This document shows, in pieces, positions 7,132-15,844 of a stretch of DNA of 64,000 bases. The stretch is from Auanema rhodensis. Taxonomy: Eukaryota > Animalia > Nematoda. The stretch is from NCBI GenBank assembly GCA_964057225.1, contig OZ059897.1:17112001-17176000 (forward strand), in the 5' to 3' direction. Position numbers and translations under genes: made by a program. The notes under the pieces were generated by a model. It made no database searches. It saw only the letters and a program-made list of their open reading frames with translations, and was not told where the DNA came from. How positions within the stretch are numbered: the first letter of the stretch is position 1; the number at the start of each line of letters is the position of its first letter.

Positions 7132-8923
7132 ACTATATATGTATATATAAGATATCTTTGCAATTCCCGCATATAAACGTTCCATAAAATATCTCTTAAT
7201 TATTCTTTTTGAATTCTACTGTTTGTTCAGTGCAGCAAGAACTTTCACCTACTTTTTCTTTTTCTAAAAAAGAGACTGTTATCTTATTATTTTTAAAAAG
7301 TTATTCAACTTGCCTTCTGTTTCTTCATTCGTGGGGGGGAGTTGAATTGGACATGTTGGATATAAATAAGTATCCAAAAATTCAACCCATCGTTGTGGCA
7401 AAAGTCTAAACTATTGAATAACTCAAGCCAAGCTAAAAAGATTACCTATACACAATTGGTTGTATAAACTTCAAATAAATAGCTAAGGCTAGAGGTAGCA
7501 ATATACATGGAAGGCAAACCATTATACCGATATTTGGTTGAATAATGGATTACTGAAGAATATAAAAATGTAACACTACGCTGCTTAAAAAAATTGTATA
7601 ACATATCGGTCCAGGGAGAATGCGTCAATGTTATTATCGTTGGAAACAAATAATGACACTGGAAAATCCAATTTATTTCAAAAGGTAAAAATATGAATAA
7701 TTTTGGAGAGTTATATATTAAAGTGCAAAGATGTTCTAAAGCTCGGTTAGTTGAACGGGATTGTTGTTTGAAAATTACTAAAGTTATGTAATATTCATAA
7801 TAAATGTTCAATTAATTTAAACCAATACAGTATTACATAGGGCTAAGTATGCTACTGCAAATTCTACATCCACCTTGGTCCTATACGTTGGCCATACTGC
7901 AATTTCCTCAAATGTATTACAACCATATGCAAATGTTGTAACATGTTAGCCTTTTGTTCTCTATTCACCAATTTTCTGGTTTCATATTTAATATCATTCA
8001 ATTTTTTCTCTAGTTCACCTAATTAACTTTTAAAAAATTCGTAGGTGTTAACTTGTTTAAGGTAAAACAATAGGGCTCCAAAAACTTAAAATTTAAGTTA
8101 TGACCTAATCGTGCGTATAATTGGGTCAGGTCTTATAATCGATCTAAACGTATCTTCTATTCATTGGTAGCTATAGGCATAATACAAAATCTGTTTCTTA
8201 ATTATTTTTATAAAAGAACATTGGATGTGTTCCCATTGTATTTTAATATTTATGTTCCTGTTCTGTATGATTTGTCGTAGGTGGCTTTTTATGCTGATTG
8301 TCTCATGCTCTCTTTAATCTATTTGTTCATATTTATTCACTAACTGGTTCTAATAGACTATTATTATTCTGTTACGATGTTTGAATATCCTTAAAATGTA
8401 TACAAAAAACCATTGTTTTTAATCGTTCTTAAATTAAGAAATAAGCGTTAGGCTTTACTGATAACATTTGGCTCAAATTCGCATCTCGACTTTTTCAAAT
8501 ATTTTGTAATAGTGGATAGAACAGATACGCAGAGAAGATATGGAACCAATAAGATATTTGAAAGAAATGCTTGAGGCAAAGCGAGTGTTTGGAACAAAAA
8601 GATATGAAGAGAAGAGGAAATTGTTCTCGTTTGTCTGTGTATAACTAAGATAATTCAGAATAGTGTATTAAGAGAGAGAGAGAGATATAGAAGTTGAAAA
8701 GTTGGGAAAAAGCAAGGACTCAACCATATTTTCTTGTGTAATAAAATAAAAGATAGGATACTATGAGTGAAGAATGAGCAAGAGTAGGAGGATACGGAGA
8801 AGAAGGAGAAGACGATAGGTTGCTGGAAGAAAGACAGGAAAGAGAACACTAAATATCATCATTCCACTTCTTCCTACCTCAGTGTAGGTTTTGAAGACAA
8901 GCTCAACCGGGGCATACCGAGCA

Positions 8924-10682
8924 ATGAGCTACCTGTCCCCTCTACCGCATTACTGTTCTCCCAGGTAACTTTTCAATGTTTTCTGAATTTGACAACATAT
9001 GTATATACATGTTAGAAATAATTGGATGTTTTCTTGTTGCTTTGGGATATGTATATATATCTTCATGTTCAGTCTTTTGGATTGATCTAACCGTTAAGAT
9101 TGTGTGACAGATTATATATGAGTGCAGAATACCTCGTTTCTTCTAAAGTCCTCATTCTTCTACGTGTTTAACATTTATCTTATTTTCTTGGTCTATTAGC
9201 AACAATCAGCTACTGTCATCATATCTCGATTCAACCACGCATTTATTATTAATTTCTGCCTCTATTATCCATTTGACCTTTGAAGTTGGGGTATATACAT
9301 GTATATGCACATATAATCTAAACATATACTTAGAAAATAGGAGAGAATTAGACGAAAAGTCGGAGATGATAGATAATCCTTAGTAAATGAACTAAACTGA
9401 CCGGTTTTTGCAAGTTGCTCTCTCTGTCTTTCTTATTACCTTCCCTTTTCCTTCTCTCCTCTTTATCTTTTTCTTATCCTTTTATCTTATCTATAATTTT
9501 TATAATAATTTTGTTGCTTTATTAAAAAGTTATATATCAATCAGCTAAATAGTTCAACTAATAGGTTCATGCATGTTGCAAATATGTGGTTAAATCATAC
9601 TCCAGGCTTTGAGTATGGTTTTTTTATTTTTTTATTATTTTTGTATTCTGGTCTGCCTAGTTATATTTCTAACAATAACCATTCAAGAAAGCCATATGGG
9701 CATAGCTTTAAGAATGCAAATCCCATAATTAATTATTTTGTTTAATCGACAACGAATGAATTATTATCATTTCAGCCTCCGACGCTCTCGTTCGTGGTCT
9801 TCCTTAAGCTCTGCAACAGATCTTGAATTATGGGACCCCCGCCTCCCCCTCCTCCACCCCCTATACTCAAGCCCGTAAGTAAAGAATATTACTATACAAA
9901 TTAGTTTTATCCTATTTCATTTTTACATAATTCAAATGTAAATGTTCTAGACAGCGTCATTACCATTTAGCGGGAGGAAGACAACGAATGCACCAAGACG
10001 TGACAACAATTCCATATCTGGTAGATCATTGTCATTATACTCTTTTACTTTTAACCTTTCAGCGTCGTCCCAGCCGTCCCGTCCCCGTGTGGACAGTCAG
10101 GCATTACAGGTATTTCGAAGACTTCACGTTGAGAATGCTTAAGTTTATAATAATTATTTAGCACGCAGCGGCTCGCCTGCGTAAGACCGGCTACCACGAA
10201 CAGATTCGAGGTATAGATATACACAATTATTTTTGTAATTTATAATAAACCACAGTATAAATTTATTTAAGAAATCATTAAAAACAATGTTTCCATTCAA
10301 GTAAAAACCTCAAGCATCTCTTTTGCGAAATCAATCAATATTTTTCTCTTTCTTACATTCATAAAACATTTGATTTTTCAGGTGACATCAAGAATTTATC
10401 CGATGGAAGACTGGACAGATCGAATGAACAACTGTCTGGACAACATTGGCAGAATTGCAAGAAGCAGCACGAGCTGGACAGCCATCAAACCAGAGAACCG
10501 GTACGGACAAAAGGCTTAACCATTACCTTAAAAAACACATAGATCAAGCGGTTATGTGAAACAAAACCAAATATCTTACTCATCAAAAGTCATAAATCAA
10601 TTTTTTTAGCTATATGCTCCGTCCTTTGGTAGCAACGAACCTAGCTCGCACAGTCACGTTTACAGAAACTCCAATTCTGTAA
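8924..10682 (+). CDS. azyx-1: Upstream overlapping alternative-frame ORF of the zyxin locus (AZYX-1-like), 165 aa, 7 exons
   Basis: Exons 8924-8964, 9776-9874, 9951-10020, 10063-10109, 10162-10210, 10382-10500, 10610-10682 total 498 nt and are open throughout in a frame shifted from zyxin: MSYLSPLPHYCSPSLRRSRSWSSLSSATDLELWDPRLPLLHPLYSS...VTFTETPIL*. The arrangement matches the known C. elegans azyx-1/zyx-1 overlap. Confidence 0.8.
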
Positions 10683-12028
10683 ACTTGCCATTTTCCTCTC
10701 AAGTAAGAATGCCATATTGATTTTTTATATATACTGTTTTGCAGATATTACCTAATTCTTCAAACGCTTCTCATAATACTCTTCCACCCTCAGAAAATAG
10801 AACTACTGTCGAATATATAACAAATGCACGCTCTAAAATTCTCCAACCACCTTCTCCTGGCTTTTCTCCTATTAGTACAACAACAGCATCAAACATACAT
10901 AATAGTTTTGGAAATGACAATTCTTTACACCATGCAAGTAACTCATATTTCGTGCAAGCGCCAAATTCACTACACTATCACAAACCTATAAATGTTCCTA
11001 TAAAACGCGAATATACTTCTTCTTCTTCTTCGTCTTCGTTCAGTAATACGTAAGATTTTTTAAAATCTACATTTTTAATTTTGTTATTACAAGGTGTTTT
11101 CTTAACATTTTGGTATAATATTATATTTGAGTTAACTACAATATAATTATCTATGAGGTTTTCAGTCGTTCAAATGAAGCTATTCTCGATCCTCAAACAA
11201 GACTTCACACATTTGCTACTCAAACTTACGTAAACGATCAGCCAGGACACCATTCGAACCTCGGGCAAAGTAGATCTGGTATTGAACCTGCCTTCACACA
11301 CTCAACGAATCCGTTTGCTGTAGAACTTCGTGACAGAGGTTATTATATGTCATTTTTCGAAAACATTCATTTTCATATAGAATTTTAATATCTAGTAATC
11401 ATCAACATGATGTTTTAATTTCAGGTTTAACAGTTTCACAGCGGGAAGCAAACCAATTCCGACATTCTCAAAGACGTGCAGATAGTGAATTGCCATTCGA
11501 TGTCAATGAACTGTTGAAAGTTAGTTTAAATATCTTTAGAAAAAAACAATACATACTTATCAAAATCCGTGCTTTATTTCCAATTTGAGAAGTCTGTGTT
11601 TATTTTGTTTTGCCTATTATTCGTGAGTGACTAGAAAAAGAATTCATATTAAAGTAGCTTCAATGTCTAGAATTAGATTTTAATTTTCTTTTAAACAGCC
11701 GAAAAAGCGAATTTTACGTGAACTAAAAAATTTGGACTGTTATCTAATAACTATAACTTGTTTATGAATATCATGAGGGCATACAATCTGTTCATTCTAG
11801 TGACACGCTCACTTTCGGCTTAAGTTTATGACTTGTAGAAATTTACATTAAACCAATGAATTCGAGAAATGTTTCGGAGCTGAAGATCGTTGAGAACATT
11901 TTCATGTTATTTTCTCTCTTTCTAGCATTTAACTCTTTTTCAATCCCCCTAGGGCATGTGGTCATCGATTTTTAGCTTCTCTTTTTCTCTACCCTTTTCT
12001 ACTCTCTTACCATTCTTATTCTTGTCCT

Positions 12029-12064
<36 letters not shown>

Positions 12065-15000
12065 GATAGATATATATATATTCTTGTTATTCTTTATCCA
12101 TATTGTTTTCAACAAACATTTAAAAAGAATCGTTTGTGCATATGACCCGTTTTGTAGTATGCTTTAAAATATGTTTTAAAAACTTAAGAAAACAAAATTA
12201 TACACTTTTGTTTTTATCATTAGTCGCTCTGAATGCATATTCTTGTAAATATTTGTAAAAATACATTTTGAAGTCGGGATATAAGCAAAGCAATGTAATA
12301 AAATAATTTTAATCTAATCACTTTTTCTAGAACTCATTCCGTGGTGACGAAGTCGATCAACTCGTTATCCAAATGGCAAACCAACTTCGTGGAAATGAAC
12401 ATTCTCACCCTAGTCAGGGCACGTCTTTCAGCCCATCCATGACGAACAAGGCATCCTCTACAATGTCAACGACACGAACAAATGTCATGCAACGATCGAG
12501 TGAGTCTTTGTTTATTTTGGTAATAATAGCAAGATTTGAGCGCTTACACATATTGGAAAACAGTAAATTTTGCGAGAATGTTAGCTTCTTTCGTTCTTCC
12601 GTCTCTCTTATGTATAATGCTCTAAAATACACTTCCAAAAAATCATAGATTTTACACTTTCTTGTATTTAAATGTAGAAGCTCTTGAAAATGAATGTTGA
12701 ACATTGAAGAAAAACTTTAAAGCCTTCTTGCTTTCACCCCATTTAGCTGTCCATGCTCTTCATTTAGAATTCATTGTCAGACAACGACACAATCATCATC
12801 TTTTTGTTCGTTTCTTCAGTTTCAGCTTCATCATTTTAGCATCGACTACTAACATTCGCCACTGTCATTATTTCTTTCTTCGTTCTCGTCTCTCTTAATC
12901 ATTACTCTTTCTTCCTCTTTTTGACCCAGCTGCTCTTTTTCAATATCTAATCATGCCGTCTATTCAACATATAAAAAAAGGAGATATCGTTTCAAGATGT
13001 AAGCATCAACAGTAAACACTCGCAAAATTATGTATTAGCACTATGAGGAATTCAGATACATTTTTCAATAATGAATAGATATTTTCCATTTTAAGGAATT
13101 ATTTTAGTTCTGAAAAATCATTCTTTCGCAATCCTTTATACAAATGTTTCTTATTAGGTAAGAAAAAAATATCATGTATCAATAAAGTGAGGATGAAATG
13201 CTGAAAATTCCAACTGAAGTTTATAAAAAATTGGAAAAGTCAAATAATTTTATTTTCCAATTTTTAATTTTCTGGATATTTTGTAAATACCACTTTGCAC
13301 TAAAGTTGAAATTCTATTCGAAAATCAAATGAAAGCTGGCCTGTTTCGAAATGTCTAATTCTGGAAAACAAATGGTTCTAAAAGATATGTTGATATACTA
13401 AAATTTCGAATCAACAAAAAAAGAATTATCACGAAGCAGATAAATATAAGTACCGCCCATTCTGATTCTTCAAGTTTGCCTCCTTCCTCCCCCTCCCTCG
13501 TTCTTTTTCACGTCTGCTTAGTCTCCGCCCAACATTTGTGTTGTGTAGAGAAACGCGCTCTTGCTTCTTGCTCTGCTTCTAGAAGGTCAAGCTATTCAAG
13601 CTTTCAACAAACAGTTATTTAGTCTAAGTCATACTTATTGGACAAATAATTCAACTCGTTATATTTCTTTCTATCAACATAAATTGCAATGGCTGATAAA
13701 GAAGGTATCGCGTATGAGTCTTCTATCTCTTCAGTGTAAAAAACACATCTTTAAATGTTGACACAAGTTGATCTAGTTTGTTTCACTTTGCTTTTCTTAG
13801 TGTATACTTATTATCTTTTCTACTTTTTTTATTCAAGTGATGTTATACACTAAACGTAAAAAATTAGCTTAAAACACAAATTGGGATTAACAGTGTTTCT
13901 AATTACTGTTCGATATGCCTTTTTAAAACTTACTTTTTGATTTTACAGATATATGTGTGGCATGTAATAGTGCGATTACTTTCGAAAAGCCGGGATGTGT
14001 TGCCCTTGATCAGGTTTGAATTTCGAATTTTCATCTCAAGTACAGCTTTAAACTTGTAAACCAATACATAAGCAAAATAATATTTGAATATAGTTAAACT
14101 TTTTTGTTAAAAGTATATTGATTTCACTTTGTTGTTCTAGCTGCTTTTGCTTCTTCAACTATCGACAGTTGTTCAAAATTGTTCTCGTTGTGTCATTTTT
14201 TCTCTTCTCTCATTTCATGTGTTTTGCTGACTACTGTTTCAGTCCTTTTCTACTCAAGAAGATCAGAAAAGTTGGAAAATAGAAGGAAATTATTAATGAA
14301 AAACGCATTCCTTTCTTTTTCTGAACGTTTTAAAAACTTTACATTTTTCTCACATCTTTCAGGTATTTCATGTGAGCTGTTTCAACTGTAACAAATGTGG
14401 GCGTATTCTCGCTGGCAGTTCCTTTTACAATATTGAAAACAATCCAACTTGTGAAAGTTGTTATACGGTAAGAAAATTATAACTAATTCAAACTCGAATA
14501 TTATGTTATTTCATTATTCTGCAATATATATCACCCTAATCCAATCTCAACTGAAATTTGTTAGGAAACATACTTAATAACAAATGACAGTTCCCAATGG
14601 CCCTTTCTTGAACAAAATTTGCTTAGTTCTGGTCTTTTCAAAAAAATCATTCAATGAAAAAATGTAATGATATCAGAAAAATTGAATTATATATCTGACC
14701 CTTAAGCAAGAACAGCTGTTGTGATTGACTCGACAAAATAATCAGTCTAGTAGAACGACTGGAAAACACCACGCACACACATATATACAAACTTAATAGC
14801 TTCAAAATCATTATTATTCTGTCAGAAAATTGTTGATGGCATGCTTGCAGAAGTTTTAAATTTTCGATCTGTAAAAGAAAATCTTAGCCCCCTCATGAAA
14901 CGGCTTAAAATTTCACGATGGTGTCACTTCATAATATTTTGCTGCTGTTTTAGAACTTATTCGAAATAAAGAGCATAAAGGAAAGGTCCCTTGAGAAAAC

Positions 15001-15844
15001 ACATGAAATATCACAATAAAACAGGAGCAAAAATCTTTCCATGCTTTTTTCTAATATTTAGACACACAGCAATCAGTCTGCATAGAGATCTTTTGATGAT
15101 TAGGGAATGACGGCCTCTCCACTCTTTTGAGCATTCATATTAAATTGTTTCTACTTTTCATGCTGAGTGGTGTTTCTAACTTATCTGTTTACATTTCAGG
15201 AATCTTTGGACAAATGCATGAAATGTGAGAAACCTATCTCAGACAAGGTCTAACTCGGCCTAGAAACTCTTTAACAACATTTCATTCCAGTTATTGCGTG
15301 CTTGCGGTGGTACTTTTCATGTGGAATGCTTCACTTGTACAGTATGCAACACAGCTCTTGACGGTGTACCTTTCACAGTTGATTCTGATAATAATGTGCA
15401 TTGTGTTCCATGCTTTCATGAGTGAGTTCGGCAAAGCGGTTTTGAATATCTAAATTGCAAGCGATCTTGTTTGATTTATATTAATCTAAATATATTTCAT
15501 ATAAATGTAATACGTTTTAGGTAACAGTATATTTTTGTATGTTTAGAAAGTTTGCTCCTCGATGCGCAGTATGTCAACGTGGAATTATTCCGGTTGAAGG
15601 AGAAAAAGAAAGTGTTCGTGTTGTAGCTATGGACAAGTCTTTCCATGTTGACTGTTATCGCTGTGAAGATTGTGGGTTGCAACTATCCAGTAAGGTAAAT
15701 CCAGAATACAACATTTGCATCAGCAGAAAAAATTAAGTAATACTTCAATTTTAGATTGAGGGACAAGGATGTTATCCATTGGATTCACATCTTTACTGTA
15801 AAACCTGTAACTCAAATCGATTACGCGTTTTGGCAAATGCATGA
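9830..15844 (+). CDS. zyx-1: Zyxin, long isoform (Pro-rich N-terminus + 3 LIM domains)
   Basis: MGPPPPPPPPP start, ALQHAAARLRKTGY, GDIKNLSDGRLDR and GDEVDQLV match C. elegans ZYX-1 as I know it. LIM domains include ICVACNS...FHVSCFNCNKC and KFAPRCAVCQRGIIPVEGEKESVRVVAMDKSFHVDCYRCEDCG. TGA at 15842-15844. Confidence 0.95.
12029..12081. repeat. (TA)n microsatellite, imperfect
   Basis: TA dinucleotide run inside a zyxin intron. Confidence 0.9.
13689..15844 (+). CDS. zyx-1: Zyxin short LIM-only isoform from an internal alternative first exon (MADKE...)
   Basis: ATGGCTGATAAAGAAG|gtatcg at 13689-13704 splices in phase to the first LIM exon at 13949; equivalent to the C. elegans short isoform (zyx-1b). 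Confidence 0.7.

What the first reader, a model, noticed from the sequence alone, without database searches (positions are those of the whole stretch)
8924..10682. Dual-coding zyxin locus: intact 165-aa overlapping gene (azyx-1-like) across seven exons
Seen: an ATG in an upstream exon (8924) opens a frame that runs stop-free through six exons shared with zyxin, about 133 codons read in two frames, ending at TAA 10680-10682. These exons are conspicuously GC-rich. Known: C. elegans azyx-1 is an upstream overlapping ORF of similar length (about 166 aa as I recall) that modulates zyx-1 translation. Inference: the dual-coding system is conserved in this species and would be missed by standard annotation and by the ORF track.
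Basis: partly seen in the sequence, partly recalled or inferred. Interest (0 to 1): 0.75.

Follow-up and report, generated by a model that had tools for sequence, protein, structure and literature searches.

The report
Conserved azyx-1 gene overlapping worm zyxin
This worm's zyxin gene carries a second, 165-residue protein written in a shifted reading frame over its first exons; it is the counterpart of C. elegans azyx-1, and comparison with other worms shows the hidden protein is kept more strictly than the zyxin stretch it overlaps.

Summary
Seven exons with AG/GT borders (8924-8964 ... 10610-10682) join into 498 nt: a 165-aa ORF ending at TAA 10680-10682. It runs +1 to zyxin for 403 nt from the zyxin ATG (9830).

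The product is the ortholog of C. elegans AZYX-1a (166 aa, PMC10575671). By eye, 98 of 133 overlap residues are identical. The first ten residues, the internal Met of AZYX-1b and the stop position are the same.

What goes beyond the paper: at least 12 public nematode gene models (Caenorhabditis, Haemonchus, Cooperia, Heligmosomoides, Steinernema) are chimeras that carry stretches of this frame. Against H. contortus, the azyx frame is 79% identical and the zyxin frame 59% over the same nucleotides. H. contortus DNA rebuilt from its two protein frames differs from the window mostly at azyx third codon positions (39/103 against 16/111 and 16/110, p = 5e-6). Both frames are therefore under selection, and azyx dominates in exons 2 and 5.

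Verdict: a real, conserved overlapping gene and a new member of a known kind. The scan has no earlier azyx or zyxin note in this genome.

The parts
8924..8964 (+). azyx-1 exon 0. It holds start codon 8924-8926 and encodes residues 1-13 plus two bases of codon 14. It lies upstream of the zyxin coding sequence, so no zyxin frame constrains it.
   Evidence: donor cag|gtaac. (in-frame stop 14 codons upstream; context cgagcaATGA). The first ten residues, MSYLSPLPHY, are identical in C. elegans and in the models that include the start, from 9 other species.
9776..9874 (+). Shared exon 1. Bases 9776-9829 code for azyx only (5' UTR of zyxin). The zyxin ATG is at 9830-9832, and both frames are read from there on.
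   Evidence: acceptor tttcag|C, donor CCC|gtaag. Zyxin starts MGPPPPPPPPP, as in P0167, P0173 and P0178.
9951..10020 (+). Shared exon 2. It contains the conserved internal Met (9988-9990, residue 60) that corresponds to the AZYX-1b start of C. elegans. The azyx frame is much better conserved here than the zyxin frame.
   Evidence: Against H. contortus, azyx is 20/23 identical and zyxin 11/23.
10063..10109 (+). Shared exon 3.
   Evidence: Azyx 12/15, zyxin 10/15 against H. contortus.
10162..10210 (+). Shared exon 4. Both frames are highly conserved; the zyxin frame reads HAAARLRKTGY.
   Evidence: Azyx 14/16, zyxin 15/16.
10382..10500 (+). Shared exon 5, the longest. The azyx frame is far better conserved than the zyxin frame.
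   Evidence: Azyx 29/39, zyxin 14/39 against H. contortus.
10610..10682 (+). Shared exon 6 up to the azyx stop, TAA 10680-10682. The exon runs on to 10702 for zyxin.
   Evidence: The stop falls at the same distance (133 codons after the Trp that overlaps the zyxin ATG) as in C. elegans AZYX-1a (counted by eye).
10745..15844 (+). The rest of the zyxin (zyx-1) gene. Mid-region exons lie at about 10745-11049, 11166-11340, about 11425-11520, about 12331-12500 and about 13945-14016. LIM-domain exons lie at 14363-14467, 15201-15247, 15291-15421, 15547-15694 and 15755-15844 (stop TGA).
   Evidence: Pfam LIM hits on three exons. tblastn of the Auanema sp. JU1783 zyxin P0173. Translations.

Best explanation
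This is the zyx-1 (zyxin) locus of an Auanema-like rhabditid nematode. It carries the ortholog of C. elegans azyx-1, a 165-aa protein of 19 kDa and pI 10.4 that is probably disordered. Translation starts at an AUG in a 5' exon, 95 nt upstream of the zyxin AUG in the spliced mRNA. The frame is +1 to zyxin, runs through six exons and stops 403 nt after the zyxin AUG.

Shown here: the ORF and its splice signals, its orthology to AZYX-1a, and purifying selection on the AZYX protein itself across rhabditine nematodes. That selection acts on top of, and in exons 2 and 5 more strongly than, selection on the zyxin N-terminus.

Inferred from the C. elegans work (PMC10575671): scanning ribosomes meet the azyx AUG first (G at -3). 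Those that start there read through the zyxin AUG (A at -3, G at +4) and cannot reinitiate at it, so azyx translation lowers long-isoform zyxin output in cis. The AZYX peptide also acts in trans on zyxin levels. The depth of protein-level conservation argues that the peptide, and not only the act of translating it, is functional.
For: Anatomy.

Host gene: it is zyxin, with three LIM exons. The nearest public protein is the Auanema sp. JU1783 zyxin. The locus is single-copy in its own genome.

Orthology: the C. elegans AZYX-1a sequence in S4 Table matches 98/133 overlap residues by eye, the first 10 residues are identical, the stop is at the same place, and the AZYX-1b Met is conserved.

Other species: local alignments of the window product to azyx-frame stretches inside public models. 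H. contortus P0183 gives 72% over 146 columns, E 7e-76. C. angaria P0175 gives 75% over 77. C. auriculariae P0172, C. brenneri P0165, C. sp. 36 P0170, C. nigoni P0152/P0154, Cooperia P0181, H. polygyrus P0158 and Steinernema P0003 also match.

Selection: over the same 111 codons against Haemonchus, azyx is 79% identical and zyxin 59%. If only zyxin were constrained, azyx identity would be 28 +/- 4% (maximum 42% in 5000 trials). With no synonymous change allowed at all it would be 67 +/- 2%. Observed is 80%. The reverse null gives zyxin 30% against 59% observed, so both frames are selected.

Reconstruction: the H. contortus zyxin (P0176) and azyx (P0183) proteins are mutually compatible as +1 frames of one DNA over 110/110 codons. 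Swapped-species controls fail at codon 11. This fixes 324 of 333 bases. Differences from the window fall at azyx codon position 3 in 39/103 sites, against 16/111 and 16/110 at positions 1 and 2 (Fisher p = 5e-6).

Upstream part: the 32 azyx-only codons upstream of the zyxin ATG keep 17-22 identities across genera.

Mechanism: in C. elegans, ATG-to-TAC and deletion mutants raise long ZYX-1 2-3 fold, and peptides cover more than 60% of AZYX-1.
Against: There is no RNA or protein evidence for this species, so exon 0, the 811-nt intron and translation are inferred. Synonymous change was inferred from paired protein frames in one species pair over 110 codons, and in two short Caenorhabditis stretches where no position bias is visible.

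The C. elegans comparison was counted by eye, because the printed sequence has no reference. The cross-species azyx sequences come from gene models that are themselves wrong as models. The last exon and the stop are compared with C. elegans only.

AlphaFold2 gives no confident structure for the azyx part (pLDDT under 50, shallow alignment). No family or look-alike was found, so the trans mechanism stays unknown. The Steinernema similarity fades after about 60 residues.
Confidence: 0.88

Rival explanations
1. The open +1 frame is an untranslated by-product. A Pro/Ser/Arg-rich zyxin N-terminus offers few chances for +1 stops, and the resemblance to C. elegans AZYX-1 only mirrors zyxin conservation.
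For: With the zyxin protein held fixed, 3-5% of random codon choices leave the frame open. Only about 6 zyxin codons are at direct risk. The control zyxin exons also have few +1 stops (8 in 323 codons).
Against: Azyx-frame identity (79-80%) exceeds zyxin-frame identity (59%). It also exceeds the upper bound for a by-product (67 +/- 2%). Substitutions pile up at azyx third positions. The 32 codons upstream of the zyxin ATG, with no zyxin frame over them, are conserved, with an invariant ten-residue start. The stop position is shared with C. elegans. Peptides were detected in C. elegans.
Confidence: 0.02
2. The uoORF matters only in cis. Its start codon and length are kept because translating it throttles zyxin, and the peptide has no function of its own.
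For: The cis effect is the best-documented one in C. elegans. AlphaFold2 sees no fold. No related family is known.
Against: A purely cis role needs only an AUG and an open frame. It does not predict 74-80% amino-acid identity across genera, change concentrated at azyx third positions, or conservation exceeding that of the overlapped zyxin frame in exons 2 and 5. Overexpression in trans changes ZYX-1 levels and muscle phenotypes in C. elegans (abstract).
Confidence: 0.05
3. Exon 0 is chiefly an alternative first coding exon of zyxin. The MSYLSPLPHY start is spliced so that it enters the zyxin frame, giving N-terminally distinct zyxin isoforms as many public models draw it, and the stand-alone 165-aa product is minor or absent here.
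For: A JGI contig ORF (P0013, 400 aa, not a spliced model) starts MSYLSPLPHQ and runs uninterrupted into three LIM domains. The Steinernema model P0003 does the same. In the window, exon 0 (phase 2) joined to exon 11166 (phase 2) stays in the zyxin frame.
Against: The junction from azyx frame to zyxin frame differs in almost every model: after about 49, 62, 64, 76, 110 or 145 residues, some through invented filler sequence. That is typical of predictors forcing one ORF. The azyx frame downstream of those junctions is conserved anyway (exon 5: 29/39). C. elegans peptides map to the azyx C-terminus, and the matching stretches are conserved here. This rival could be true in addition to the best explanation rather than in its place.
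Confidence: 0.05

Closest known systems
C. elegans azyx-1 / AZYX-1a (uoORF on transcript F42G4.3a.1; Parmar et al., PLoS Biol 2023, PMC10575671)
   Same: It has the same host gene (zyx-1) and the same +1 frame. The start lies in a 5' exon upstream of the zyxin AUG. Length is 165 against 166 aa. The first ten residues are identical, the stop position is the same, and the internal Met gives a 106-aa AZYX-1b. Both are basic (pI 10.4 against 11.1). Overlap identity is 98/133 by eye.
   Different: The species and genus differ. The upstream-only part is one residue shorter and about half identical beyond residue 10. The first intron is 811 nt here. In C. elegans, the printed distance of 184 bp against about 98 nt of coding sequence implies a short intron; that is my inference. 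No expression, proteomic or genetic data exist for this species.
Alternative ORFs over vertebrate and fly zyxin-family genes (zyx, lpp, trip6) listed from OpenProt in S4 Table of the same paper
   Same: They are upstream or overlapping ORFs at the 5' end of zyxin-family genes.
   Different: They show no visible sequence similarity to AZYX-1 (by eye). They are 35-156 aa long, and the paper calls the conservation only 'putative syntenic'. The nematode orthologs found here share real sequence similarity.
Classic long dual-coding loci of animals, such as GNAS XLalphas/ALEX and CDKN2A INK4a/ARF (from my own knowledge, not tested here)
   Same: Two proteins are read from the same exons in different frames, with both frames under selection.
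   Different: The genes are unrelated. The ARF and INK4a frames come from alternative first exons rather than from leaky scanning on one mRNA. No homology is claimed.

Membership tests
AZYX-1 (azyx-1 orthologs) | The ORF starts at an AUG in the 5' UTR of the long zyx-1 transcript, upstream of the zyxin AUG. | tested here: met
   ATG 8924 lies 95 nt upstream of zyxin ATG 9830 in the inferred spliced mRNA. The transcript itself is inferred.
AZYX-1 (azyx-1 orthologs) | It is read in a different frame from zyxin across the proline-rich N-terminal exons and is about 166 aa long. | tested here: met
   +1 frame, 403-nt overlap, 165 aa. The stop falls at the same codon count as in C. elegans (by eye).
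AZYX-1 (azyx-1 orthologs) | Sequence similarity to C. elegans AZYX-1a. | tested here: met
   98/133 identical in the overlap and 10/10 at the start, counted by eye against S4 Table. Computed alignments to azyx-frame stretches of other Caenorhabditis models give 70-75%. No computed alignment to the C. elegans protein itself was made, because that sequence has no reference.
AZYX-1 (azyx-1 orthologs) | An internal Met gives the shorter AZYX-1b (the 106 C-terminal residues). | tested here: met
   Met 60 (9988-9990) leaves 106 residues. It aligns with the C. elegans Met 61.
AZYX-1 (azyx-1 orthologs) | The product is translated (peptides seen by mass spectrometry). | not testable with these tools
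   Shown only for C. elegans.
AZYX-1 (azyx-1 orthologs) | Loss of the azyx AUG raises long-isoform zyxin (cis repression), and overexpression changes ZYX-1 in trans. | not testable with these tools
   C. elegans genetics only.
Zyxin / ZYX-1 (host gene) | Three consecutive C-terminal LIM domains after a proline-rich N-terminus. | tested here: met
   Pfam LIM (PF00412) hits on exons 14300-14479, 15264-15422 and 15521-15733. The gene starts with a poly-Pro run. The best full-length relatives are nematode ZYX-1 proteins.

The most novel reading that the evidence does not exclude
azyx-1 is not a C. elegans oddity but an old nematode gene, present at least across Caenorhabditis, Auanema and Strongylida, with its N-terminal third recognisable in Steinernema. 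Its protein is under stronger purifying selection than the zyxin N-terminus written over the same bases, so in exons 2 and 5 zyxin is effectively the passenger frame. A further possibility is that the invariant MSYLSPLPHY start is shared, through alternative splicing, with a zyxin isoform. One AUG would then feed either AZYX or an N-terminally distinct zyxin.
Probability: 0.75. Interest if true: 0.65.

Novelty: new member of a known kind. Interest (0 to 1): 0.55.

Why it matters
The 2023 paper describes azyx-1 in C. elegans only. It reports just 'putative syntenic' conservation and remarks that such small genes escape BLAST.

Here the ortholog is found in a distant rhabditid. Public data, read correctly, show amino-acid-level conservation across several nematode orders, with the substitution pattern following the hidden frame. 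That supports a function for the peptide itself, not only for its translation. It also marks conserved stretches to mutate: the ten-residue N-terminus and the exon 4-5 block.

It exposes a recurrent annotation error as well, namely azyx-zyxin chimeras in at least 12 public models, including parasites of livestock. The locus is a clean test case for how two frames share constraint exon by exon.

Tried and rejected
No DNA of relatives was obtained, so no direct dN/dS or synonymous-rate test could be run.

2. Metagenome scan. The 82-aa open segment around it gave one locus, L002, which matched intron-derived letters and has no azyx or zyxin similarity.

3. The search for homologous proteins with the exon-5 open segment: no candidate. 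Given the length window of 45-143 aa, this says little.

4. ESM Atlas look-alikes of the H. contortus azyx part: best score 0.84, which is chance level.

5. AlphaFold2 on P0183 with a 12-row alignment: mean pLDDT 44 and no secondary structure in the azyx part. I read this as probably disordered, but the alignment is shallow.

6. The joined 165-aa product was not sent to any database tool, because a spliced model has no reference. It was built only inside scripts from window.fa. Identities to it were counted by eye.

7. I considered and rejected the idea that the zyxin poly-Pro start is a recent overprint on an older azyx-fused zyxin. Poly-Pro plus the LRKT.Y block also occur in Panagrolaimus and in other non-rhabditine models, so both N-termini are old.

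Full report
**1. Observation**

The region was read and the seven proposed segments were joined in a script. They are 8924-8964, 9776-9874, 9951-10020, 10063-10109, 10162-10210, 10382-10500 and 10610-10682. All internal borders carry nematode-type acceptors (mostly tttcag or ttttag) and GT donors.

The joined sequence is 498 nt, which gives 165 codons and TAA at 10680-10682 with no internal stop. ATG 8924 follows an in-frame stop 14 codons upstream. The zyxin ATG is at 9830, and the alternative frame is +1 to it. The overlap is 403 nt, and the third frame has 7 stops.

The exons are 45-66% GC, their introns 20-30%, and other zyxin exons 35-45%. Zyxin-frame GC3 is 0.53 in the overlap and 0.26 elsewhere in the gene.

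With the zyxin protein fixed, random codon choice leaves the +1 frame open in 3-5% of trials. Shuffling the region's own synonymous codons leaves it open in 0.08%. On its own it is only moderately improbable.

**2. The host gene and the organism**

Three downstream exons hit Pfam LIM. The last coding exons match C. elegans ZYX-1 peptides listed in the paper's S2 Table.

A HMMER search with the LIM3 exon, followed by cluster look-ups and a word search, returned nematode zyxins. The closest is from Auanema sp. JU1783 (P0173). It is 72% identical over the first 111 residues and nearly identical in the LIM exons. My data fit the genus but do not test the species.

The locus is single-copy in its 181-Mb assembly.

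**3. Orthology to azyx-1**

PMC10575671 describes C. elegans azyx-1. The ORF starts upstream of the zyx-1 AUG and reads in another frame. It is 166 aa long, peptides cover more than 60% of it, and a 106-aa AZYX-1b starts at an internal Met. S4 Table prints the sequence.

By eye, the window product aligns to it without gaps over the whole 133-residue overlap, with 98 identities. The first ten residues are identical, the AZYX-1b Met is conserved (residue 60 here), and the stop falls at the same codon. I did not type that sequence into any tool, so this count is manual. The joined product was not searched in any database for the same reason: it has no reference.

**4. Evidence from other species**

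This part came unexpectedly. Many public zyxin gene models are chimeras that begin in, or pass through, the azyx frame and then jump into the zyxin frame:

| Model | Species | Azyx-frame content |
|---|---|---|
| P0175 | C. angaria | 76 residues |
| P0172 | C. auriculariae | about 110 residues |
| P0165 | C. brenneri | residues 1-64 |
| P0170 | C. sp. 36 | residues 1-62 |
| P0152, P0154 | C. nigoni | residues 1-49 and 1-62 |
| P0183 | H. contortus | 145 residues, through exon 5 |
| P0176, P0177 | apparently H. contortus (exon-5 azyx stretch identical to P0183) | exon 5 |
| P0181 | Cooperia oncophora | residues 1-50 |
| P0158 | Heligmosomoides polygyrus | residues 6-35 (overlap part only) |
| P0003 | Steinernema hermaphroditum | residues 1-82 |

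The switch point differs from model to model. Some models insert filler sequence at the switch. Both features mark these junctions as predictor artefacts. The translated DNA is real, however.

MSYLSPLPHY is invariant in every model that includes the start. The 32 azyx-only codons keep 17-22 identities to the window. The colinear alignment across residue 14 supports the 8964/9776 junction.

**5. Is the azyx frame itself selected?**

- **Identity over the same 111 codons.** Window against Haemonchus gives azyx 79% and zyxin 59%. Against C. elegans it gives azyx 74% (by eye) and zyxin 51%.
- **Null models.** I back-translated the Haemonchus zyxin protein with random codons. That predicts azyx identity of 28 +/- 4%, with a maximum of 42% in 5000 trials. 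If the window's own codon is kept at every conserved zyxin residue, the prediction is 67 +/- 2%. Observed is 80%. The reverse null predicts zyxin identity of 30%, against 59% observed. Both frames are therefore constrained.
- **Reconstruction from two frames.** The H. contortus zyxin (P0176) and azyx (P0183) proteins are mutually compatible as +1 frames of one DNA over 110/110 codons. Swapped-species controls fail at codon 11. This determines 324 of 333 bases.
- **Where the differences fall.** Against the window, differences occur at azyx codon position 3 (zyxin position 1) in 39/103 sites. At the other two positions they occur in 16/111 and 16/110 sites. Fisher p = 5e-6. The substitution periodicity follows the hidden frame.
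- **By exon.**

| Exon | Azyx identity | Zyxin identity |
|---|---|---|
| 1 (from the zyxin ATG) | 10/14 | 13/15 |
| 2 | 20/23 | 11/23 |
| 3 | 12/15 | 10/15 |
| 4 | 14/16 | 15/16 |
| 5 | 29/39 | 14/39 |

The limits are these. Only one long species pair was available. The two short Caenorhabditis stretches show no bias. No real DNA of relatives was read.

**6. Mechanism**

Shown here:
- the gene's anatomy;
- orthology to AZYX-1a;
- protein-level constraint on the azyx frame.

Inferred from C. elegans genetics and from the two AUG contexts:
- Ribosomes that start at 8924 read past 9830 and end 403 nt downstream, so they cannot make long zyxin. This is cis repression by competition for scanning ribosomes.
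- The peptide also has a trans role, which its conservation supports.

The product is basic (pI 10.4) and rich in Arg, Ser, Pro and Thr. AlphaFold2 predicts no structure for it. It probably works through short linear motifs. I note an LPxY-type motif at residues 7-10 and an RRPS site at 71-74. These are leads only.

**7. Comparison and novelty**

The gene kind is known (azyx-1, published 2023), and this is a new member of it. The paper looked at 9 animals through OpenProt and claimed only syntenic conservation. Full-text searches found no other paper that mentions azyx-1. The nematode-wide sequence conservation, the dominance of the hidden frame in two exons and the recurrent chimeric annotations therefore appear to be unreported.

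**8. What failed**

- The metagenome scan gave one spurious locus.
- One protein search found no candidate.
- The Atlas gave chance-level scores.

Noticed in passing
window 8924-8964 with 11166-11340; protein P0013: Exon 0 ends in phase 2 and zyxin exon 11166 begins in phase 2, so a direct splice would give an in-frame zyxin isoform that starts with the azyx N-terminus. A JGI contig ORF, P0013, is 400 aa and uninterrupted. Its LIM region is closest to Steinernema and other nematode zyxins. It starts MSYLSPLPHQ and runs straight into three LIM domains. The azyx start codon may also serve a zyxin isoform in some nematodes.
   Followed up: partly
proteins P0152, P0154, P0165, P0170, P0172, P0175, P0181, P0158, P0183, P0176, P0177, P0003: Public gene models of zyxin in at least ten nematode species are azyx-zyxin chimeras. 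The frame switch falls at a different place in each, and some contain invented filler. P0176 and P0177 (apparently H. contortus) contain exon 5 twice, once in each frame.
   Followed up: partly
window 10021-10062: The intron between shared exons 2 and 3 is only 42 nt, a multiple of three, and has no stop in either the azyx or the zyxin frame (open segments 9931-10158 and 9951-10139). Retaining it would add 14 residues to both proteins without breaking either.
   Followed up: no
window 9756-9775: An ATG at 9756, inside the acceptor region of the first intron, is in frame with azyx (MNYYHFS, then exon 1). A transcript that starts within the intron could still make an N-terminally different AZYX.
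   Followed up: no
window 8774-8815: A short upstream ORF lies in the same frame as azyx. ATG 8774 encodes an Arg-rich 14-residue peptide and then a stop. It sits next to a (GA)n run at about 8670-8690. Whether it lies inside the transcript is unknown.
   Followed up: no
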